In this document: in pieces, positions 43,943-63,070 of the stretch | Numbering within the stretch: position 1 is the first letter of the stretch | How the letters are laid out: the number at the start of each line of letters is the position of its first letter | DNA from: Macrostomum lignano | Lineage: Eukaryota | Assembly: GCA_002269645.1 (NCBI GenBank) | Contig: NIVC01002129.1 | Location: 62,001-126,000, forward strand | DNA length: 64,000 bases | Direction: 5' to 3' | Position numbers and translations under genes: made by a program | The notes under the pieces: generated by a model | Seen by the model: the letters and a program-made list of their open reading frames with translations, nothing else | Told to the model about the DNA's origin: nothing | The model's database searches: none

Positions 43943-44151
43943 GCGGTCATGCATGTTTGAGCATAACCATATATGGGGTTAAGCAAATACAGCTGTTAAA
44001 ATCCGGTTCTTTGTTCAAACAATGTAGGGTTCTAAATCATTCTGTTTGCGCGTGATTGCTAAAATAGATATGACTCATTCTAAAATAAATAGACTTTCCT
44101 AGAATATTACTTTAAGTAGAGCATTACGGTATGGTTTAATAACTCCCTACA
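43943..44151 (-). mobile_element. diverged LTR (U3) remnant related to the gypsy LTRs at 55.6/62.6 kb
   Basis: GCGGTCATGCATGTTTGAGCAT, AAGCAAATA, TCTGTTTGC, AAAATAGATATGACTCATTCTAAAA and TAGAATATTACTTTAAGTAG co-linear with 55932-56165; ends CCCTACA; other boundary not found. Confidence 0.8.
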
Positions 44152-50570: not shown

Positions 50571-51517
50571 TTAAATAGTAAGTCTGCCCTGTGCATCAGC
50601 AGAGCTGGCACTGGTGCTATTCCACACCCTTTTACATGACTCGGAATTGAACTTTTCATAATTTACTTTTGACCAATTAGTGATTACTTTGTACATTTCA
50701 TCACCACTGTCTATGTCGCGGAGTATGAGCCCTACCTTGTACCAAGAATCATAGTCTTGGTTTTTGTGTTGTATTATACTTAACAACTTTGAAGCTCCTT
50801 CACAAGTGGGTGATGGAACGGTGCTTTTTAGTGCCTGTTTATCGGGTTCTTGATTTTATTTTTTATCCTGTGGCTTTATTTATCTATTTATCTCATCAAG
50901 AATTACATCTGGCATGTGTATTAAACCTTTGGGCTTTGTACGTTTGTATTCCTTAATTTTACCAAATAATGGTAACAAAATAATATGATAGTAATAGTCA
51001 CCAAATAATAATAGAAACCTGGTGGAGCAAATACTAAGGCGGGAATATCAAAACCCACACTTTGTTGAATCGTTACTTTCAATACATCTACCTTGTTAAA
51101 GTAAAAGTGGTGACCCTTGTTTGTCTGAACAATCCAATCACAATGAGTCATACACAGTTCATTCAACCTAGGGCATAGTTCAGCATTATCAATATCGATT
51201 ACGGTTATATTTGAATTTCGAGTATCTATCCAAATCATGTTGTGTACCTCTGGTCGAAATGGTGGGGAGGTTGAATTTCTATCCTCTGTGGTTGGCATTC
51301 TTGATGGTATTTTTTTCTTTGTTTTACTATTCCATGTTATACTGCAACTTCCGAATCTAAAATTAAGTTCTCCATAGAGATTAATTAGTTTATCGTACGA
51401 TTTTGTGTGTTTTAAATTTGTCAATCTTGGTAGTGGTGGTGGTGCATCATGGTTTTGAAACGGATCCTGTACGATCACAGGAGAGACACTTGAATCGTTT
51501 TGATTTTTTTCTTCCAT
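50571..51517 (-). pseudogene. AEP bifunctional primase-polymerase (Prim-Pol) plus PriCT-2 domain, frameshifted
   Basis: ITVIDID, IVQTNKGHHFYF and GFDIPALVFAPPG motifs; downstream QDYDSWYKVGLIL...WSKVNYEKFNSESCKRVWNS...RLTI fits PriCT-2. Confidence 0.8.
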
Positions 51518-51529
51518 TTTATTAAAAAA

Positions 51530-51877
51530 AACTTTAAAAATAACATTTATCGGTTTCAATTTTCTTCTCAAGGGTTATGGGGAGTTTGAAAATGTTCAAC
51601 TTCAGCATGACGAAAAATTTGTCATTCCTTATGTGCTGTCTCGAAACCAATGCCAATTTATCAACATGTGCAAGATATACTCTGAATGAATGCGAATATG
51701 GGGGCATTTAAAATCGGTGTGTTTTAATATTTCTGCTTTATATTACATCGTAAGCTTTATCAATTTCTTTAATTAGTCGAGACTTTCGAGTGGGGTTTTT
51801 AATTTGAGAGAAATTTATAATAGAATCATAGTACTTTTGTAGCAGAACATTTCGTACATTTGGGTTATTAGCTTCCA
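51530..51877 (-). pseudogene. small decayed ORF upstream of the primase, unknown function
   Basis: MEANNPNVRNVLLQKYYDSIINFSQIKNPTRKSRLIKEIDKAYDV, then a frameshifted continuation. Confidence 0.3.
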
Positions 51878-54220: not shown

Positions 54221-55127
54221 TGAAGTACTACTCCTTCTCGGGTTCTTGAAGATCTTCCTAGAAATAGAACCCGCTGCTCCTGAAGAAGCTAGATAGCACC
54301 GTTGTACTACCTATCGATTTGACTGAAAATGAACCTAAAACGTAAGCCTTGACTTGGTAGGGTTGCTGCCACCTTGGTGTGCGGACTCGACGCGTCGGCA
54401 GAGTTGTCTATCCGTCACCTGAAATAAAATAACGAAAACGCTCGGAGCAAAGGCAAATCTGAAAATGTCTCGACAGTCGATCGTCTTAGTAGAATGCTGC
54501 TCGAACCTGAAAACCTGAAAAACCTGAAATGAGAGAGGAGAGCTCGGAGAAGGCTTCACGAGTCAGCCACGATGCTCCGCGAGACGACGCAGTCTGGAGA
54601 AAAATGGCTCGCAGATGCTCCGTATTTATAGCCGAGCGGACCCCCAAAAGTCACGTGAGTTTCATGCGGTGAGCGCGTGAAACTTCCTTATTTGGGCATT
54701 AAAATCATGCGAGCGACGCGTGATCCAAGGCCAACTTCCAAATAAGGCAACCCTGTCACGCAGCAGTGGCGTGACTCAAGGTCAGTGGCCATGCACAGAG
54801 TGCGTGCACAGTCACGTGCTTAGTCTGTGCTAAAAATAGAATCGTGGGCGAATGAGTCATCCTGTTTACTCCCTCTAGGCAGCCCTTACACTCCGCGCAG
54901 GTGATGAGTCATCCTGCTACGCCTCCTCGGCGCGGGAGGGGAAAACATTGAGTGTGGCTGCCGCGCCCTCTCAGGCGATGAGTCATCGGGCAGTAAACAC
55001 TCAGGCCCAGCACAGGGTATCTCTCTCACTAGATCAGGTGGACTGAGCAACTGTGCAGCGGACCACAGCACTCTTAGGGAAAGCTAGTGAATGCTGCTGA
55101 ATAACCAGTTAGCAGCCAGTCACTACA
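54221..55127 (-). mobile_element. solo LTR2 (907 bp)
   Basis: TGAAG...CTACA ends on +; perfect 4-bp TSD CTTC (54217-54220, 55128-55131); minus-strand TATAAATA at 54623-54630. Confidence 0.9.
54686..54985. promoter_or_regulatory. LTR enhancer: two CArG boxes and four AP-1 sites
   Basis: CCTTATTTGG 54686-54695, CCAAATAAGG 54738-54747; TGACTCA/TGAGTCA at 54772, 54853, 54905, 54979. Confidence 0.7.
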
Positions 55128-55579: not shown

Positions 55580-56195
55580 TGAAGAGTTTAAGAGTGGTGA
55601 TCAGTCACTCAGAAACTCCCACTTCTAGACACTGGGGAACAAGTGCCTAGGTATTTACTAGTTCAAATAACTTACTGCAGCGGATCCTTTAGTGGCTTGT
55701 AGGCTTCTTGGTTTGGCTTAGGTGACTCAGTACCTCCGGGAGTCCTTGACTTTTATCAATTGGACAGGTATGGTCCCTCAGAGATTGGTCTTCTTATTTC
55801 TTCAGTGTCTTCTTAGAGACCGCTCCGAGTCTGAATTTTTTACTTGAATTTTCACTTATATTTATAGCAAAATTTTGGAGAAAAACCGGTTTGGGATTGG
55901 GTATTTACTTAGGTCAAAAATGTTTGATTAAGCGGTCATGCATGTTTGAGCATTACCAGATATGGAATTAAGCAAATAAAACTCACGAGAACCGGTTTTT
56001 TGATCAAATAAACGTCGGTCCTACGTAGGGCTCTGAGTCACTTCTGTTTGCATGTGACTCATTCTAAAAATAGAATTTCTAAAAATAGATATGACTCATC
56101 ATGACTCATTCTAAAAATAGATTGCGAGTTTAAATTGATTTAGTTAGAATATTACTTTAAGTAGTGCGTTTTGTTATAACTTACTGTTCTCTACA
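55580..56195 (-). repeat. 3' LTR (616 bp)
   Basis: minus strand TGTAG...CTTCA; TATAAATA 55859-55866; AP-1 motifs at 56034, 56055, 56092, 56102. Confidence 0.85.
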
Positions 56196-56207
56196 ATATC
56201 TCCCATG
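56196..56207 (-). other. polypurine-tract-like sequence abutting the 3' LTR
   Basis: minus strand CATGGGAGATAT|TGTAG; short and imperfect. Confidence 0.45.
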
Positions 56208-56448
56208 GTTACAAAAAATTCGTCCCGAATTTAAAGTTGGAATAATAAAATTATGGTTTTATTGACAGAAATGAGCATGAATTCACAGTAATGATGTGGA
56301 ATAAATATGTAAGTATTTATAGAGCAAGAGCGGATTGTACATATCATAATTGCGACATTAGCTGGAAAAAAACCCATTACCAAATTAATTTAGTACGCTG
56401 CGTTCGCGTCGAGTTAAGCGTGTTAGAGTAAGGGTTATAAATTATTTG

Positions 56449-57045
56449 TTACTCGAAGGCATGCCTTAGCATGGCCTTTAGCCGCATTACTAAGGTGACC
56501 ATTGGCCAGTATAGGAACTGAAGTGGTGTGTAGCCTGTATCTTCTGTCCTGTCGATGATGGTGAGATAGGCTGTCACGTCGGTGGTGATTGTAGTGTCCA
56601 CCGTGATGTTGCGGCCCATTTCTAGCAGTCTGTCACGGAAGACGACTTGGCGTAAGGTCACGGGCCATGTCCGGATGGCCCACGTCAGGTCAGCTGTGGA
56701 CATTGTGGCTATTTGTTCCGTGTGGAGCTGGGTTTCCGGAACGATTGGTATTCTACGCGTGTAGTCTAGCGTGGTGGTTGTCATTGCCCAACCGCACTCT
56801 AGGCAGTGCCGAATGTCGTGGCGTGCGATTGTTTCGGCACAAGAAACGCAACTCCAATGGCCCTGGGTGCACAATTGGAGTTGGGGGAGGTCGCCGCAAA
56901 CGATACACCACACCCTGTCTTGTCGACAGAGTGGACATCGTGTAATTTCCTCTCTTTCGCCACAGTCGTTGCAGGCCAGATGGCCCCATGCGCACGTAGG
57001 CACAATATACGGCTTGGTGTCGAGGCATATCGGGCAGTCTTCCAT
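56449..57045 (-). CDS. accessory ORF B: tandem C3HC4 RING-RING protein with a helical C-terminal domain (198 aa from the MEDCPIC start)
   Basis: CPICLDTKPYIVPTCAWGHLACNDC..CPLC (C-x2-C-x10-C-x3-H-x2-C-x2-C-x8-C-x2-C) and CIVC..CTQGHWSCVSC..CLEC (spacing 8/3/2/2/11). Confidence 0.88.
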   Translation of the reverse strand: MEDCPICLDTKPYIVPTCAWGHLACNDCGEREEITRCPLCRQDRVWCIVCGDLPQLQLCTQGHWSCVSCAETIARHDIRHCLECGWAMTTTTLDYTRRIPIVPETQLHTEQIATMSTADLTWAIRTWPVTLRQVVFRDRLLEMGRNITVDTTITTDVTAYLTIIDRTEDTGYTPLQFLYWPMVTLVMRLKAMLRHAFE

Positions 57046-57061
57046 ATCTGTGGGCAAGATA

Positions 57062-57719
57062 TTAATTACTTTCTGATTCGGAACTAATATACTGATACGA
57101 TTCTTGGGGTGGTAATATGTAAGATAAGTCGTCATTACGCAGAATGAGTGCAGGTAGAGTTGTACAGAGGATGGGGCATGGGTGAAAATTCATATCATTA
57201 ACAATTTTAAACAGCTTATGTTCAATTTCTTGTGGAGATAATTGCCGGAGTCTAGAACCGTAGGAAGAGGAATAGCGAACGAGGTATTTACGTGTTTTAT
57301 GAGCAACACGTGGTATGGGCCATGATCTGAGGCGGATAATTATAGCATGTGATGGAAAAAGAGCATAAGTGAATGGGTGAAGCTGTAGGTTATACGAGCT
57401 AGTCTGCTTGAATGCATGCAAGTTTGTTGTTAACTTTAGGTAAAGGGGTGGTATCGCATATAGGACACTGACAAATGGAGCGATAAGCAAGCTTCTTAAT
57501 ACATTGTGTGCACATAAAATGTTGATTTAAGCAATATTGTTCAGTGCGCCAGGAGTTGCATATCATGCATTGACGGAGATTACCTCGACACATAGGGCAA
57601 TTTTTTAAAGGTTTTTTGTAATGTGCAAGGCTTAAGCAAGAACCACACACCTGGTGTCTATTGACACATATACAAGGTAGTTTACATGAAAATTCTCCGA
57701 GACAGATAGGACAATCCAT
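57062..57719 (-). CDS. accessory ORF A: paralogous RING-RING protein whose C-terminal domain is in the +1 frame (frameshift near 57440)
   Basis: CPIC..CVNRHQVCGSC..CPMCRGNL and CMIC..CLNQHFMCTQC..CPIC (spacing 8/3/2/2/11, as in ORF B); the shifted frame gives NLQLHP...IRLRSWPI, aligning with ORF B ETQLHT...WAIRTWPV. Confidence 0.82.
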
Positions 57720-57861: not shown

Positions 57862-60800
57862 TTAGGTTGTACGTATGACCGACAGGTGGTGCGTTTGTTG
57901 TTTATGTTTCGGCGTGTGCAGTGGCAATTTGTTTATTTGTTGTTTTGTGTGGTCTGGATTTTGTAGGTCTGGGAGGAATGTAGTGTCGTTAGTGATACGT
58001 TTTAGACGTTGAATGTGAACATAGAACTGAGGTTGATGTGGATCCTGGATATTAGCGAGGCGTGCCGTTGTTGCCGATACCAATGCCGTTACTCGGAATG
58101 GTCCTTTGTATTTAAGTGCGTGTTTATGCGTATGTTGCGCAGGGTAATGTAGGTAAACGATGTCTCTGACTTGTAGAGTAGATGTATGATTGCTGGTGGT
58201 GACTACTGCCTGTTGATTTTCTAAATTGTGTTTCGCGATTTGCCATGCCAGGTGTAGCTGCGAAGTAAACTTTTGTAGTGTTGTTGGCGTTTCCACGTAC
58301 TGAGAAGGTAACAGTTTTTGGACTAGTAGGCTTGGTGGCTGAAAGTCTCGAGAGAACATAAGGAAAAACGGTGTGTTCTCTGTTGAACGGTGTACTGCAC
58401 TGTTGTAGGCCATTGTCACTGACTGCAGGTATATGATCCAATCTTCAGGTTGCTTATAGACGAAGTGTGTCAACATTTCGTGTAGATTTCTATGGAATCG
58501 TTCTACTAGGTTAGCTTTTGGATTGTAGGTGGAGGTGAAAATTTGTTGGATATTTAGTAGTTTAGCAGCCTGTTGGAATAGTTGCGACGTAAATTGTGTA
58601 CCATTGTCGGAGGTTAGTGTCTTTGGAGTTCCGTATTTGCAGATAATTTCATTGTAGAAGGCCATTGCAACTGTAGTGGCTGTAATGTCAGGCAGTGGAA
58701 TGGCAACAGCAAATTTAGAGAACACGTCTAATGCGGTAAGAATGTAAGTGTAATCGATAGCATGTTGTCGAGCTGGCGGTAGTGGTCCAGTAATATCAAG
58801 TGATACAATGTCCCATGTGGTTGTCTTTGGTACGGATTGAAGTTCTGGTTTTTGTCTTCTTCCAGTCTTTGTTGAAGCACATGAGTGGCATTGTAGGCAG
58901 TAATTGCGGATGTCTGCATTCATTGTTGGCCAGAAATAGAACTGGGCTATTCTGTGGATTGTTTTCTTGGCAGATAAATGTCCGGCTAGGAGTGTGTCGT
59001 GTAGTTCATGTAGGATTGCAGCGCGATAGTTGTATGGTAGGTACAATCTTGGGGTATTATTGTGCAGCCAGTAAAGTGCTAGTTCTCTGAAGATGAGATT
59101 ATTGCCTTGTTTCCGTAAAAATTTCTTTTCGATCTTGGTGAGCGGTTTTTGCATTTCTTCTGTGTCTTCGTATACAGCTTTGTAGAAATTATCTTCTTGC
59201 TGCGCTTTCAATAGATCCATCATGGTTGGAATGGGGTGGACAGCATTGACTTCATATGCTCTTGATAGCGCATCCGCGGCCTTGTTTGTAGGTCCTGGTT
59301 TATAGATGAGATGAAAGTTATAGTCCTGAATTTTGAGGACCATCCGGATAAGTCTGTTATTCGTTTGTCCTTTTGTTTTGACAACATGAGTCAGCGGTGC
59401 GTGGTCTGTGCGGATGATGGTTGGTAGCGGTGATCCGTAGATGTAGTAATGAAACTGTCGAAGAGCGAATAAAATCGCTAGTAATTCACGTTCGGTGGCA
59501 GACCATTTTGTTTCATTTGGACGCAGGGCTCGGCTGATAAAGGCAATTGGTTTTTCCTTTTTTTGATATGTTTCTTGTAGTAGTACAGCTCCTAAACCAC
59601 TTCCTGATGCATCAGTTTCGATAATAAACGGCTTTTGGAAGTCTGGGTGTTTGAGCAGAGCGTCGCTGGTTAGTTGCTGTTTAATTTTATCAAAACTGTT
59701 TTGCTGTTCCGTTTTCCAATTTTCTTCCTTCCATTTCGGTAACTTCAACAACTCATATAATGGCTTTGCAGTTTGCGCGAAGTTAGGTAGGAATTTTCGG
59801 AAGTACTGTGCTAATCCAAGGAATGATTGTAGTTTTGTAAGTTTTGTAGGCTTGGGGAACTTCTTGACCTTTTCGACATTATTAGGGTCGGGTGAAATTC
59901 CTCTTGCTGAAACATGATGTCCCAGATATCGGACTGATTCTCTGCAGAATTTACATTTTGTAGGTTGTAGTTTTAGTCCTTGTTTCTGAAGTAGAAAGAG
60001 AGCTTGTTCCATGACACTCAGTAGTTGTTCGAAATTATCGCCGAAGGCGAGAATATCGTCCACATAATGCAATAGATTCGTACATCCCGCTAGCATGTAG
60101 GCTGTTAAGCGGCTCATGGTCGCTGGGGAGTTGGAAATTCCCATTGGGCTTCTCTGGTACGCAAAGACTTCTCCCTTGTAGGTCTTGAATGCTGTATATT
60201 GTTTCGATTCTTCTTCAAGTTCAATTTGCCAAAAGCCATGTCGTAGATCAAATACGGTGAAGAGAGTAGCTGTATTCAGTCGTGCCAATAGTTCCGAAAT
60301 CTTTGGTAGACTTTGTTGATCTGTGGGGATGTATTTATTTAGGACTCGAAAGTCACAGACAAGTCGTCTTTCATTTGTTTCTTTTTTTTCAACTAGTAGA
60401 CACGGTGATGAATATGCTGAGACTGTTCGTTTGATGATTCCGGCCTTGAGCATTTTTTCGATGATTTCATCAAAATGTTGTTGCAGATGTTTTGCTACCG
60501 GGTATGGTTTGCATTGGATGGGTTCCTGGTGGGGTAGCAGTTCGATTTTCTGCTTGATGTCGCGAGAGCGACCAATGTCGTAATCATGATGACAAAAGAC
60601 GTCATTGTACTTCCAAAGTAGATCTCTGACCTGTGTTTTTTGTCCTTCCGTAATGGGACTTTGCGAGAGATCAATTTGTTGTAAGAATTGTTGCTTTGAC
60701 ATCCTTGTTGGTTTTGTATGTTGAATCAGCATGACGGAGGCTTGTGTGTTGAGGTGTCCCATGCATGTTCCTGCGTAGATCTTAACGGGATGTTGGTGAG

Positions 60801-62562
60801 GGTTGACAATCTGTACCGGAATAACTTTTTCTGATGTGATCAGGACCAATGCCGTTGGAATTAGAACTTCCTTTGTTGTTAGTAGTTTCTTTCTTGGTTC
60901 GAAAATCATAGCTTCTTCGACGTCTTCGTTATTTACTAGATAAGCCTTAACCCAACAAGTGCTTTCAGGCTGTATGAATACATCTTGTCGGAGATGAACT
61001 TTAGGTTGTAAATGAACTTGGCTGACCAATGGGTGTTCTACGTTGTCTAGTTTGAATTTCTGTTTGTTAAAATCAAATGTCAAGGGTAGATTCAGTTTTT
61101 GGAATGTGTCAATTCCAATGATAACATCTTGACTTGGAAGGTGGTCGATAACAAATGCTTGAACAGGGAGTTGTTTATTTGCCAGTTTGAGCATAATCCC
61201 AACTTGTCCAAGGATATTAAGCGCATGTCCACCTGCTCCAGCAACAGCGATGGATGATGGTCGCATTCGAAGTTGTAGTTTGTCATATAGTCTCTTAGTA
61301 ATGACAGTGATGGAGCTTCCAGAATCAAGCAGTGCTTTGCTGGGCCTGTTGTTGACAAGTACTTGAGCCATTGCTCTTCCCATATTGGCTTGGAGAGTAC
61401 AGACGTAGTTGGCTGGCCATTTTGGGTCGGTTGGTAGTGGAGGTGACATTGGCGGAGGAATTGCTGGCTTGAAATCGATTTTTGGATAAATGTTTGAGGT
61501 TTCTGGTGCTGTAGGTTCTGGTCGAATTTCTTGAACTTGCATAGGTGTCTCTTCGGTTGGTTCTTCTCCTGTAGTGGTAGTGTCTGTTTGTTTGATTATT
61601 TGAAAGATGCCTCGAGTTTGTGGACAATTTCTTGCTGCGCATCGGACTACTGTGACAAGAATGAGTAGCGCTAAGTAGATCCATACAATGCAAGCGCTGG
61701 AGAAAAGAAAACCTTGGTATAGACTTCCTCGTCCTTGTATTAGGTCCAGAAAGCTATTTGACCAAAACGATTGAATGGCATTGTGCATAGTCATTCCTAT
61801 TGGAGATGTAGGTCGATCTGCATCTCGTTGCTGTCGTTCCGTGAACAGTTTTGTCAGTACTTGCCGTTGTGAAATAAAAACCTGCAGGAAATCGTTGATA
61901 GTCCATCCTGGGGTGATTTCGTCTAGTTTAATATCTCCAAAGGGTTTGTATGTTGTTTTATTGAATTTTACTTGGAGGTCCGTCATTTCGTATGTCTCGT
62001 CAACAATAACTTGCGAGTTTGAAATGTTTTTAATATCGCCTGCCGACGAAATTTGGTGTAGTAGATCGTTTAAGTTGAAATAGTTGGCTGAGTTTGTACA
62101 TGGTCTTGGAATGGCGGTTCCAACAATAATATTGTGGACAGTGTCCAAAAATCCTCGGATGCGCCTTCCCTTGTAAAAGGCCTCGATTCGAGGTTTGTCG
62201 TAGCAGGTTGTTGTAGTATTTGATGGCAAGATGTTAAAGTGGTTGATCGGTGTACATTTATAGATTAGCAAATATCCGTAAACTGGAATTGCCAAGACAT
62301 CTTCAATACCTGTGATTTTCCTAAAGGTCGTCGTGGGATTGGCATAATAGTTCTGTCTTGCGTAATTTAGGCTGGTTTCGTGCATTCGGCACGTTAGTTT
62401 GACCATGGATCGATGCAGATAGTTCAGTTGCTTGTGTAGCTTATGTTCCATGGCGGCTAGTTTTGCTGCCAGAAGTCGTGCTGATACTAGAGAAGGCTTA
62501 GGTAGGTCTCGCTTATGTCGTTCTATGACATCTTCTCTCTGATAGGTTCCATTTACTACCAT
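57862..62562 (-). CDS. Env(gB-like C-terminal half + TM)-PR-RT-RNaseH-IN polyprotein, 1566 aa
   Basis: furin-like RHKR at aa 15-18; gB domain III/IV-like QLNYLHRSMVKLTC...ANPTT...GYLLIYKCTP...CYDKPRI...RGFLD...PCTNSANYF; TM LFSSACIVWIYLALLILVTVV; protease LLDSGS (about 61320); RT YVDD (60055-60066); RNase H ETDASG...ELLA...TDH...ADALSR; integrase HHCC, SLDITG, SDNG, VERFH and GPF motif. Confidence 0.97.
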   Translation of the reverse strand: MVVNGTYQREDVIERHKRDLPKPSLVSARLLAAKLAAMEHKLHKQLNYLHRSMVKLTCRMHETSLNYARQNYYANPTTTFRKITGIEDVLAIPVYGYLLIYKCTPINHFNILPSNTTTTCYDKPRIEAFYKGRRIRGFLDTVHNIIVGTAIPRPCTNSANYFNLNDLLHQISSAGDIKNISNSQVIVDETYEMTDLQVKFNKTTYKPFGDIKLDEITPGWTINDFLQVFISQRQVLTKLFTERQQRDADRPTSPIGMTMHNAIQSFWSNSFLDLIQGRGSLYQGFLFSSACIVWIYLALLILVTVVRCAARNCPQTRGIFQIIKQTDTTTTGEEPTEETPMQVQEIRPEPTAPETSNIYPKIDFKPAIPPPMSPPLPTDPKWPANYVCTLQANMGRAMAQVLVNNRPSKALLDSGSSITVITKRLYDKLQLRMRPSSIAVAGAGGHALNILGQVGIMLKLANKQLPVQAFVIDHLPSQDVIIGIDTFQKLNLPLTFDFNKQKFKLDNVEHPLVSQVHLQPKVHLRQDVFIQPESTCWVKAYLVNNEDVEEAMIFEPRKKLLTTKEVLIPTALVLITSEKVIPVQIVNPHQHPVKIYAGTCMGHLNTQASVMLIQHTKPTRMSKQQFLQQIDLSQSPITEGQKTQVRDLLWKYNDVFCHHDYDIGRSRDIKQKIELLPHQEPIQCKPYPVAKHLQQHFDEIIEKMLKAGIIKRTVSAYSSPCLLVEKKETNERRLVCDFRVLNKYIPTDQQSLPKISELLARLNTATLFTVFDLRHGFWQIELEEESKQYTAFKTYKGEVFAYQRSPMGISNSPATMSRLTAYMLAGCTNLLHYVDDILAFGDNFEQLLSVMEQALFLLQKQGLKLQPTKCKFCRESVRYLGHHVSARGISPDPNNVEKVKKFPKPTKLTKLQSFLGLAQYFRKFLPNFAQTAKPLYELLKLPKWKEENWKTEQQNSFDKIKQQLTSDALLKHPDFQKPFIIETDASGSGLGAVLLQETYQKKEKPIAFISRALRPNETKWSATERELLAILFALRQFHYYIYGSPLPTIIRTDHAPLTHVVKTKGQTNNRLIRMVLKIQDYNFHLIYKPGPTNKAADALSRAYEVNAVHPIPTMMDLLKAQQEDNFYKAVYEDTEEMQKPLTKIEKKFLRKQGNNLIFRELALYWLHNNTPRLYLPYNYRAAILHELHDTLLAGHLSAKKTIHRIAQFYFWPTMNADIRNYCLQCHSCASTKTGRRQKPELQSVPKTTTWDIVSLDITGPLPPARQHAIDYTYILTALDVFSKFAVAIPLPDITATTVAMAFYNEIICKYGTPKTLTSDNGTQFTSQLFQQAAKLLNIQQIFTSTYNPKANLVERFHRNLHEMLTHFVYKQPEDWIIYLQSVTMAYNSAVHRSTENTPFFLMFSRDFQPPSLLVQKLLPSQYVETPTTLQKFTSQLHLAWQIAKHNLENQQAVVTTSNHTSTLQVRDIVYLHYPAQHTHKHALKYKGPFRVTALVSATTARLANIQDPHQPQFYVHIQRLKRITNDTTFLPDLQNPDHTKQQINKLPLHTPKHKQQTHHLSVIRTT

Positions 62563-62566
62563 TTAC

Positions 62567-63070
62567 TAGTGGCTTGTAGGCTTCTTGGTTTGGCTTAGGT
62601 GACTCAGTACCTCCGGGAGTCCTTGACTTTTATCAATTGGACAGGTATGGTCCCTCAGAGATTGGTCTTCTTATTTCTTCAGTGTCTTCTTAGAGACCGC
62701 TCCGAGTCTGAATTTTTTACTTGAATTTTCACTTATATTTATAGCAAAATTTTGGAGAAAAACCGGTTTGGGATTGGGTATTTACTTAGGTCAAAAATGT
62801 TTGATTAAGCGGTCATGCATGTTTGAGCATTACCAGATATGGAATTAAGCAAATAAAACTCACGAGAACCGGTTTTTTGATCAAATAAACGTCGGTCCTA
62901 CGTAGGGCTCTGAGTCACTTCTGTTTGCATGTGACTCATTCTAAAATAGAATTTCTAAAAATAGATATGACTCATCATGACTCATTCTAAAATAGATTGC
63001 GAGTTTAAATTGATTTAGTTAGAATATTACTTTAAGTAGTGCGTTTTGTTATAACTTACTGTTCTCTACA
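62567..63070 (-). repeat. 5' LTR, missing the last about 110 bp (U5 side)
   Basis: near-identical to 55690-56195; joins directly to env-derived sequence. Confidence 0.92.

What the first reader, a model, noticed from the sequence alone, without database searches (positions are those of the whole stretch)
56449..57719. LTR retroelement carrying two paralogous tandem double-RING (Siah-like C3HC4) accessory genes
Seen: between the integrase stop (57862) and the 3' LTR, in the element's sense, lie two genes with two RING fingers each. The second RINGs share identical spacing (C-x2-C-x8-C-x3-H-x2-C-x2-C-x11-C-x2-C). The C-terminal domains align (QLH...R[ST]WP, and ...TLVMR versus ...ALILR). Known: C-x3-H spacing and a CPxCRG end are typical of SINA/Siah RINGs; DNA viruses use RING E3s (herpes ICP0, baculovirus IE2/PE38) against host defences; Ty3/gypsy elements normally lack such genes. 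Inference: an env-bearing retrotransposon has acquired and duplicated a ubiquitin-ligase cassette, possibly to degrade host silencing or antiviral factors.
Basis: partly seen in the sequence, partly recalled or inferred. Interest (0 to 1): 0.92.

Follow-up and report, generated by a model that had tools for sequence, protein, structure and literature searches.

The report
Flatworm retroelement carrying double-RING accessory genes
A defective copy of an envelope-bearing LTR retroelement from a Macrostomum-like flatworm carries, after its integrase, two related genes for double-RING-finger proteins; related elements keep the same genes under selection, and I found no earlier report of RING genes inside an LTR retroelement.

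Summary
Two tandem genes lie between the integrase stop (57862) and the 3' LTR (55690-56195). Each encodes two C3HC4 RING fingers.

- **Gene B** (56449-57045) is intact at 198 aa.

The genes belong to the element family and are not a one-off passenger.
- A full HMMER scan found a small family of about 200-aa proteins: two RINGs plus a helical C-terminal domain.
- Related elements have these genes in the same place. One Logan lineage keeps both genes intact, and three of four M. lignano genome copies examined keep a shortened A-type gene (the fourth has only a decayed remnant).
- All 16 zinc ligands are invariant. dN/dS is about 0.08-0.15, on small samples.
- The AlphaFold model is confident (pLDDT 90.6). 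Only its RING parts match known folds.

"Siah-like" is not supported as family membership.

The family is GAG-ENV-POL with a gB-type env. This copy lacks gag and the N-terminal half of env.

E3-ligase activity is inferred and counter-defence is untested. I found no literature precedent.

The parts
62567..63070 (-). 5' LTR (506 bp as delimited by the repeat). It starts TGTAGAG and carries a TATA-like box and five TGAGTCA heptamers.
   Evidence: 99.6% identical to 55690-56195. The LTR start TGTAGAG is shared with M. lignano relative L007. TGAGTCA is enriched: 27 in the window against 10.5 expected, with 5 in each LTR.
57862..62562 (-). Single 1566-aa ORF: the C-terminal part of a gB-type env-like glycoprotein (with TM helix) fused in frame to PR-RT-RNaseH-IN. 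The pol part has no breaks. Env is N-terminally truncated by one deletion, which also removed gag.
   Evidence: It is 68% identical over 1467 aa to M. lignano polyprotein P0001. Full-length relative L007 has about 350 more env codons and a gag ORF upstream.
61378..62562 (-). Env-like fragment (aa 1-395). The Pfam Monjiviricetes_fusion match is at 62086-62469, and the TM helix is at 61645-61710.
   Evidence: PF24664 scores E 1.1e-5 and 24.1 bits, below the cut-off of 27, matching profile positions 312-431 of 653. The AF2 model is poor (pLDDT 35), so the fold is not confirmed.
61081..61377 (-). Aspartic protease domain
   Evidence: Asp_protease_2 / RVP
59911..60390 (-). Reverse transcriptase domain
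   Evidence: RVT_1, E 6.7e-28
59320..59718 (-). RNase H domain
   Evidence: RT_RNaseH / RT_RNaseH_2
58519..59037 (-). Integrase (H2C2 zinc-binding domain plus catalytic core)
   Evidence: Integrase_H2C2 E 3e-19, rve E 9e-16
57062..57719 (-). Gene A (A-type double-RING accessory gene), broken by one frameshift. RING1 is at 57588-57713 and RING2 at 57456-57569. The C-terminal domain is read in a second frame.
   Evidence: The orthologue P0043 is an intact 206-aa ORF directly downstream of integrase in L001: 53% identity over the RING part and 30% over the C-terminal part.
56449..57045 (-). Gene B (B-type double-RING accessory gene), intact at 198 aa. RING1 is at 56926-57036, RING2 at 56794-56907, and the helical C-terminal domain at about 56452-56733.
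   Evidence: Homologues are P0037 (E 3.7e-62), P0039, P0040 and P0043.
56196..56226 (-). Polypurine-tract region immediately upstream of the 3' LTR
   Evidence: GGGACGA..CATGGGAGAT is conserved with M. lignano L007 at the same position.
55690..56195 (-). 3' LTR

Best explanation
Genes A and B are bona fide accessory genes of a lineage of Ty3/gypsy retroelements found in Macrostomum-type flatworms. These elements have a gB-type env and GAG-ENV-POL order.

**Architecture.** Each gene encodes a protein of about 200 aa. RING1 and RING2 are joined by an invariant 6-residue linker and followed by a helical domain of about 100 aa with a conserved W-P motif.

**Most likely function.** They are RING-type E3 ubiquitin ligases.
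- RING1 would engage the E2. It always keeps the Pro after ligand 7 and the Arg after ligand 8.
- RING2 lacks that Arg and has fixed loop lengths. It would act as a built-in partner RING, as BMI1 does for RING1B.
- The helical domain would choose the target, which could be a host factor or an element protein. The two paralogues would differ in target.

**Likely expression.** The genes are probably translated from processed sub-genomic RNAs made by cis- or trans-splicing, which is common in M. lignano.

**This copy.** It is defective. Gag and the N-terminal half of env are absent through one deletion, and gene A has one frameshift. Pol and gene B are unbroken.

**Shown:** RING sequence and fold, family membership, conserved position, purifying selection.
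**Inferred:** E3 activity, division of labour between the RINGs, mode of expression, any target.
For: **Family and position**
- The full HMMER scan found P0037, P0039, P0040, P0041 and P0043.
- L001 has integrase, a 119-nt spacer, then the intact A-type gene.
- L004 has the end of an A-type gene followed directly by the intact 208-aa P0040.
- M. lignano genome copies L008-L010 have an A-type ORF with all 16 ligands between integrase and the 3' LTR.

**Conservation**
- All 16 ligands, plus P38 and R41, are invariant at 22-36% overall identity.
- RING1 Pro and Arg are kept in 10/10 sequences. The RING2 Arg is absent in 9/10. The linker is always 6 residues and the RING2 loops are always 8 and 11.

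**Selection**
- L001 versus L004: 15 synonymous and 5 non-synonymous differences in 49 codons, dN/dS 0.08.
- L008 versus L009: 5 synonymous and 3 non-synonymous over 73 S and 299 N sites.

**Fold**
- AF2 gives pLDDT 90.6 and pTM 0.83.
- Foldseek matches RING domains at 1.3-2.5 A rmsd, and the top PDB hit is the RING1B-BMI1 fusion.
- The family profile hits TRIM21, RING1B and SIAH1 for RING1, and Bre1 for RING2.

**Expression route**
- In M. lignano, 38.8% of genes are trans-spliced and about 7% of transcription units are multi-gene precursors (PMC5730564).

The role of the Arg after the last ligand in priming E2~Ub is established RING biochemistry (my own knowledge).
Against: - No activity, transcript or protein evidence was available.
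- The Pfam RING models all score below their cut-offs.
- Foldseek E-values are above 0.01 because the matched domains are short.
- The family is tiny and seen only in a few short contigs and one genome. Selection estimates rest on 8-20 substitutions.
- In the M. lignano relatives there is only one such gene, and its C-terminal domain is cut short even in a copy with 100% identical LTRs. The full architecture is therefore not indispensable.
- In L007 the gene has decayed.
- P0039 sits on contigs that show no pol, so it could be a cellular or differently placed paralogue.
- The window copy itself has gene A broken.
Confidence: 0.6

Rival explanations
1. The proteins are conserved element genes but are not ubiquitin ligases. 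The tandem zinc modules would serve as a structural or nucleic-acid/protein-binding scaffold. Two models are the arenavirus Z RING matrix protein, which organises budding, and the Cer1 CERV protein, which binds and exports genomic RNA.
For: [quoted passage not shown] CERV is made from a spliced mRNA, uses a cysteine loop, and is needed for gRNA export (PMC10309623).
- The M. lignano A-type ORFs begin MGNALSK, a myristoylation-type N-terminus as in matrix proteins (the motif reading is my own knowledge).
- Arenavirus Z RINGs appear among weak matches to RING2.
- In M. lignano the C-terminal domain is dispensable, yet the RINGs are kept.
Against: - RING1 keeps exactly the residues that matter for E2 engagement in 10/10 members.
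- The best sequence and fold matches are catalytic E3 RINGs.
- The MG start is absent from the window's A and B and from P0039, P0040 and P0043.
- The family already has a gag with a CCHC knuckle for RNA binding.
Confidence: 0.25
2. The ORFs are a transduced fragment of a host RING gene that has no role for the element and is decaying as a passenger.
For: - Gene A is frameshifted in the window.
- The A-type gene is degenerate in L007 and shortened in L008-L010.
- LTR retroelements are known to capture foreign ORFs (PMC5408684).
Against: - The genes are present at the same position in three element lineages whose pol proteins are only 64-68% identical.
- Both are intact in the L001/L004 lineage.
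- Ligands are invariant and dN/dS is 0.08-0.15.
- No cellular homologue with the C-terminal domain was found among 1.84 billion representative proteins.
Confidence: 0.07
3. The RING genes are host genes, or genes domesticated from the element, that merely lie next to LTR sequences. The host expresses them for its own purposes, for example as restriction factors.
For: - P0037 is annotated as an M. lignano protein, and P0039 is found on contigs without pol.
- RING proteins such as TRIMs are classic host restriction factors (my own knowledge).
Against: - In the window and in L001, L004 and L008-L010 the genes lie inside the LTR pair or directly after integrase, in the element's sense, with spacers of 3-160 nt.
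- The P0037 gene model itself includes LTR-like pieces.
- The window LTRs are 99.6% identical, so this is a recent insertion carrying the genes with it.
Confidence: 0.05

Closest known systems
Platyhelminth, nematode and bryozoan 'errantivirus' Ty3/gypsy elements with HSV gB-type env in GAG-ENV-POL order (PMC13524379)
   Same: PR-RT-RH-IN pol, and an env-like class III glycoprotein segment with a TM helix upstream of pol. The M. lignano relative L007 shows gag (CCHC), then env, then pol.
   Different: [quoted passage not shown] Here env and pol form one continuous ORF. The window copy lacks gag and the N-terminal half of env.
RING E3 ligases of large DNA viruses (herpesvirus ICP0 and IE61, baculovirus and nudivirus IAP/IE2-type, giant-virus RING proteins)
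   Same: A mobile or viral genome encodes its own C3HC4 RING. Foldseek matches to these RINGs have rmsd 1.3-2.3 A over about 44 residues.
   Different: The similarity is confined to the generic RING fold (E > 0.01). No shared flanking domains were found. The carrier here is a retroelement, and no function has been tested.
SINA/SIAH E3 ligases
   Same: RING1 has the CP[IV]C...GH..C..C...CP.CR pattern. SIAH1 is the best single-sequence PDB hit (E 0.008). Sina_RING is the top Pfam model for gene B and P0040.
   Different: The score is below Pfam's cut-off. No Sina zinc fingers or TRAF-like substrate-binding domain are present. The C-terminus is helical. With the family profile, TRIM21 and RING1B score as well or better.
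Paired RINGs such as RING1B-BMI1 (PDB 6wi7 fusion), BRCA1-BARD1 and MDM2-MDMX
   Same: One RING has E2-priming residues and is coupled to a second that lacks them. The top PDB fold hit is the RING1B-BMI1 single-chain fusion. Residue pattern.
   Different: Here the two RINGs are natively in one chain, separated by 6 residues. The overall superposition on 6wi7 is poor (TM 0.21). Intramolecular pairing is inferred and was not examined in the model.
Accessory ORFs of animal LTR retroelements: Cer1 CERV (PMC10309623) and the rotifer ORF3 types GDSL esterase, DEDDy exonuclease and dUTPase (PMC5408684)
   Same: [quoted passage not shown] CERV is expressed from a spliced mRNA.
   Different: None of these is a RING protein. 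No sequence comparison with CERV was made here.
Arenavirus Z (small myristoylated RING matrix protein)
   Same: A small RING protein of an enveloped genetic element. The M. lignano A-type ORFs start with an MG...S motif. There are weak profile and fold matches.
   Different: Z has one RING and late-domain motifs. The window's A and B lack the MG start, and the matches are weak (E 0.14).

Membership tests
RING-type (C3HC4) zinc finger | Eight Cys/His ligands with C-x2-C-x(9-39)-C-x(1-3)-H-x(2-3)-C-x2-C-x(4-48)-C-x2-C spacing | tested here: met
   Both RINGs of A and B fit. RING2 of A and of B have x8 in loop 1, one residue under the textbook x9 minimum. All 16 ligands are invariant in 7 aligned family members, and the pattern is kept in 10/10 sequences.
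RING-type (C3HC4) zinc finger | Significant match to curated RING profiles or solved RING sequences | tested here: inconclusive
   All Pfam RING models score below their gathering cut-offs; the best is Sina_RING at 25 bits against 29.3. The family profile hits solved E3 RINGs at E 4e-5 to 2e-4, separately for RING1 and RING2.
RING-type (C3HC4) zinc finger | Cross-brace RING fold | tested here: met
   The AF2 model has pLDDT 90.6. Foldseek aligns 43-57 residues to many RING domains at rmsd 1.3-2.5 A with probability up to 1.0, although E > 0.01. This is a predicted structure, not a solved one.
RING-type E3 ubiquitin ligase | E2 binding and ubiquitin-transfer activity | not testable with these tools
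   Only indirect evidence: hydrophobic residue at C1+2, Pro after C7 and Arg after C8 are kept in RING1 of all members.
SINA/SIAH family | Sina-type RING scoring above the family threshold | tested here: not met
   Sina_RING scores 25.0 bits for gene B (cut-off 29.3), gives no hit for gene A, and scores 16.7-23.4 bits in homologues.
SINA/SIAH family | Two Sina zinc fingers and a TRAF-like substrate-binding domain C-terminal to the RING | tested here: not met
   No such Pfam hit at E <= 1. The C-terminal domain is predicted to be all-helical and matches nothing in PDB or BFVD.
RBR (RING-between-RING) E3 ligases | RING1-IBR-RING2 arrangement with an IBR domain between the RINGs | tested here: not met
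   The linker between the two RINGs is 6 residues in every member, and both RINGs are C3HC4. No IBR hit.
Ty3/gypsy (Metaviridae) LTR retroelement | Pol domain order PR-RT-RNaseH-IN flanked by LTRs | tested here: met
   Pfam domains occur in that order. The LTRs are 506 bp and 99.6% identical.
Ty3/gypsy (Metaviridae) LTR retroelement | Gag gene, primer-binding site and target-site duplication | tested here: not met
   In this copy there is no gag ORF and no counterpart of the sequence that follows the 5' LTR in L007. The bases flanking the 506-bp repeats do not match. The relative L007 has a gag ORF with a CCHC knuckle. The copy is therefore a deleted member.
GAG-ENV-POL errantivirus-like elements with gB-type env | Class III (gB-like) fusion glycoprotein gene upstream of pol | tested here: inconclusive
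   PF24664 matches at E 1e-5 but below its cut-off, in both the window and L007. A TM helix follows. The AF2 model of the fragment is unusable (pLDDT 35) and there is no PDB sequence match.
Cer1 CERV-like accessory proteins | Sequence or fold similarity to CERV (H, M and G domains) | not tested
   No CERV sequence was fetched. [quoted passage not shown]

The most novel reading that the evidence does not exclude
This is the first retroelement lineage found to encode its own RING E3 ubiquitin ligases. The element would use the duplicated pair as counter-defence, marking host restriction or silencing factors for degradation. Large DNA viruses do this with ICP0-type RINGs, and retroviruses do it only indirectly by hijacking host ligases.
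Probability: 0.2. Interest if true: 0.85.

Novelty: new variant of a known kind. Interest (0 to 1): 0.68.

Why it matters
Retroviruses and LTR retrotransposons are known to redirect host ubiquitin ligases. I know of none that carries a RING ligase gene of its own, and none turned up in four full-text searches or in the recent metazoan errantivirus survey.

A conserved, selected, duplicated double-RING gene would add a new class of retroelement accessory gene. It sits in envelope-bearing elements of a regeneration and stem-cell model flatworm genus. It would also offer a concrete handle on how such elements deal with host control in an animal that has a pluripotent stem-cell system.

The C-terminal domain has no recognisable relative and may define a new target-recognition module.

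Tried and rejected
- **Word-indexed homologue search.** Gene B found nothing. The family alignment recovered only P0040 and P0043. The family became visible only with the exhaustive HMMER scan.
- **Exact-sequence look-ups.** None of the window's ORFs is in the collection.
- **P0038.** This hit is a spurious low-complexity repeat protein.
- **P0044 and P0045.** These are generic Sina-like RING proteins without the family's C-terminal domain.
- **The search for related loci.** It cannot use the divergent alignment. With single proteins it found nothing in viral contigs. In metagenomes it found only a generic single-RING gene on a 65% GC contig, L012, which I rejected as a relative.
- **Env fragment.** The AF2 model is too poor to search. 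There is no PDB sequence hit.
- **NCBIfam.** Nothing found.
- **LTR comparison.** The window LTR has no detectable similarity to M. lignano LTRs beyond the first bases. I therefore could not test whether the 5' LTR is also truncated.
- **PPT motif.** It was not found in the short Logan contigs, so P0039 and P0040 could not be placed relative to an LTR.
- **Supplementary tables.** Those of the two most relevant papers are not held.
- **Source of the Logan runs.** I could not establish whether SRR316283xx-4xx are RNA or DNA, so they are not used as expression evidence.
- **RBR and Siah membership.** Both were considered and rejected (see the membership test).
Full report
**1. What is at the coordinates**

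The right end of the window holds an LTR retroelement on the minus strand.
- Two 506-bp direct repeats, 99.6% identical, lie at 62567-63070 and 55690-56195.
- Between them is one 1566-aa ORF at 57862-62562. Its Pfam domains run protease, reverse transcriptase, RNase H, integrase zinc-binding domain and integrase core.
- Downstream of its stop, in the same sense, lie the two ORFs of the finding.
  - Gene A starts at 57719.
  - Gene B is an open 198-aa frame at 56449-57045. An upstream ATG at 57135 is less likely to be the start, because homologues begin 2-8 residues before the first Cys.
- Each gene has two C3HC4 RING patterns.
- Gene A is not intact.
  - Its double-RING part is a 106-aa ORF.
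  - So gene A (57062-57719) has one frameshift.

**2. Are A and B related, and are they real genes?**

The double-RING parts align at 30% identity (E 1.4e-7). The C-terminal parts align too weakly to stand alone: 84 of 2000 shuffles score as well.

The word-indexed protein search found nothing. An exhaustive HMMER scan of 1.84 billion representatives found a small family.

| Protein | Length | E-value | Note |
|---|---|---|---|
| P0037 | 660 aa | 3.7e-62 | Several B-type modules; UniRef A0A1I8G201, M. lignano "RING-type domain-containing protein" |
| P0039 | 214 aa | 1.8e-15 | |
| P0040 | 208 aa | 5.1e-9 | |
| P0041 | 130 aa | 2e-8 | |
| P0043 | 206 aa | 1e-5 | |

- P0043 is the intact counterpart of gene A. 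It shares 53% identity over the RINGs. It shares 30% over 81 aa with A's second-frame segment (E 3e-7). This confirms both the shared architecture and the frameshift.
- In the family alignment all 16 zinc ligands are invariant, as are a Pro and an Arg in RING1. Overall identity is 22-36%.

**3. Do the genes belong to the element?**

Yes.

*Logan contigs*
- L001 carries an integrase C-terminus that is 65% identical to the window's. A 119-nt spacer follows, then P0043.
- L004 begins with the last 49 codons of an A-type gene, 87% identical in DNA to L001. The intact P0040 follows directly.
- A second lineage therefore has integrase, A and B in the same order, with both genes open.

*M. lignano genome*
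- The closest pol is M. lignano P0001, 68% identical over 1467 aa.
- Copies of that family in assembly GCA_002269645.1 show what lies downstream of integrase.
  - L008-L010 each have an A-type ORF between integrase and the 3' LTR. It has all 16 ligands, is 144 or 124 aa long, and is cut short by one premature stop each. There is no B gene.
  - L007 has only a decayed remnant, with several stops and two lost ligands.
- The three pol lineages (window, M. lignano and L001) are about 64-68% identical to each other. The association is therefore old.

*Selection*
- L001 versus L004: 15 synonymous and 5 non-synonymous differences over 49 codons, dN/dS 0.08.
- L008 versus L009: 5 synonymous and 3 non-synonymous differences over 73 synonymous and 299 non-synonymous sites.
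- The samples are small but consistent with purifying selection.

**4. What kind of element, and how complete is this copy?**
- The first 395 residues of the big ORF are not gag.
  - They give a sub-threshold match to the class III viral fusion glycoprotein model PF24664, at profile positions 312-431 of 653.
  - A transmembrane helix follows, and then the protease.
  - P0001 shares this part.
- A recent survey reports that flatworm, nematode and bryozoan env-carrying Ty3/gypsy elements have gB-type env in GAG-ENV-POL order (PMC13524379).
- The M. lignano relative L007 shows exactly this order.
  - It has 1088-bp LTRs.
  - Its gag ORF has a CCHC knuckle.
  - Its 1914-aa ENV-POL ORF extends about 350 codons further upstream than the window's.
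- The window copy therefore lacks gag, the leader and the N-terminal half of env, through one deletion.
  - No counterpart of the sequence following L007's 5' LTR is present.
  - The polypurine region and the LTR start are conserved with L007.
  - No target-site duplication flanks the 506-bp repeats.

| Gene in window copy | State |
|---|---|
| gag | absent (deletion shared with env) |
| env | one truncating deletion |
| pol | no breaks |
| gene A | one frameshift |
| gene B | no breaks |

The source organism is inferred to be a Macrostomum-type flatworm. It is not the Mlig_3_7 assembly as annotated.

**5. Structure and likely mechanism**
- An AlphaFold2 model of gene B, built with the 7-sequence alignment, is confident: pLDDT 90.6 and pTM 0.83. 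It shows two small zinc modules followed by five helices.
- Foldseek against PDB and BFVD returns only RING domains: 43-57 residues, rmsd 1.3-2.5 A, probability up to 1.0, E > 0.01.
  - The top PDB hit is the RING1B-BMI1 single-chain fusion.
  - Nothing matches the helical domain.
- With the family profile, RING1 hits TRIM21, RING1B and SIAH1 (E 4e-5 to 2e-4). RING2 hits Bre1 (E 1.6e-4).
- Across ten family sequences:
  - RING1 always keeps the Pro after ligand 7 and the Arg after ligand 8. It usually has Ile or Val two residues after ligand 1.
  - RING2 lacks that Arg in nine of ten.
  - RING2 has invariant loop lengths of 8 and 11.
  - The inter-RING linker is always 6 residues.
- From established RING biochemistry (my own knowledge), this pattern fits an active E2-engaging RING1 supported by a partner RING2. 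The helical domain, with its conserved W-P motif, would be the specificity module. This is inference.
- For translation of downstream ORFs, cis-splicing as in Cer1 CERV (PMC10309623) is plausible. So is the trans-splicing of multi-gene precursors that is common in M. lignano (PMC5730564). Neither has been shown.

**6. Comparison with known systems**
- Siah membership fails.
  - The RING score is below threshold.
  - There is no Sina zinc finger or TRAF-like domain.
  - The C-terminus is helical.
- RBR membership fails, because there is no IBR.
- The element is a deleted member of the GAG-ENV-POL gB-env flatworm elements.
- Known accessory ORFs in animal LTR elements do not include a RING protein. 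They are CERV, the rotifer GDSL esterase, DEDDy exonuclease and dUTPase, and the env types.
- Four full-text searches and the errantivirus survey gave no report of a RING gene in an LTR retroelement.
- The nearest functional analogy is the RING E3s of large DNA viruses. The similarity to them is only the generic fold.

**7. Verdict**
The missed caveat is that gene A is frameshifted.
- It is overstated on "Siah-like" and on this copy being env-bearing.
- It is untested on counter-defence.
- I rate it a new variant of a known kind: an LTR-retroelement accessory gene of a type not previously described. Interest is 0.68.

Noticed in passing
window 57862-62562; L007 10001-15745: Env and pol form one uninterrupted ORF in the window (1566 aa) and in the M. 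lignano relative (1914 aa). Pol would then be made as the cytoplasmic extension of a membrane glycoprotein. In L007 the gag ORF overlaps its start by about 120 nt in another frame.
   Followed up: partly
L008 9160-9594, L009 8002-8376, L010 7612-7986: The M. lignano A-type RING ORFs begin MGNALSK, an N-myristoylation-type start. The window's A and B, and P0039, P0040 and P0043, do not. In these copies the C-terminal domain is cut short, although the L008 LTRs are 100% identical.
   Followed up: partly
window 55690-56195 and 62567-63070; also 54772-54985: Each LTR holds five TGAGTCA (AP-1/TRE-type) heptamers, four of them clustered within about 75 bp. The window has 27 against 10.5 expected by shuffling. 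Four more lie within about 200 bp just outside the 3' LTR.
   Followed up: partly
window 50571-51571 (-): Neighbouring ORF pieces encode Prim-Pol (weak) and PriCT_2 (E 2e-10) primase domains. They are probably the remnant of a DNA element or virus-like insertion next to the retroelement.
   Followed up: no
window 1-35700: The window is packed with minisatellite arrays.
- 41-bp units at 1-2000.
- A CT-rich 13-bp array at about 16.2-18.6 kb.
- 16-24-bp units at several places.
- 45-47-bp units at 24-26.2 kb.
   Followed up: no
P0037 (UniRef A0A1I8G201, M. lignano): This annotated 660-aa protein strings together two to three B-type RING modules with pieces that match the LTR of L008-type elements. 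It is probably a gene model built across repeated element ends. It shows that B-type genes also exist in M. lignano.
   Followed up: partly
L002, L003, L011 (P0039): A 214-aa full-length family member occurs in three sequencing runs on contigs that show neither pol upstream nor a second RING gene downstream. It could be a single-gene element variant or a cellular paralogue.
   Followed up: partly
window 43943-43989: A 47-nt stretch is 91% identical to a segment of the LTR (55932-55978 and 62809-62855).
   Followed up: no
L008-L010 (M. lignano): Integrase is identical between L008 and L009, while their A-type genes differ by 8 substitutions. L010 shows the reverse pattern. This suggests recombination between copies. 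Their env-pol frames are interrupted by 1, 2 and 1 frame changes respectively.
   Followed up: no
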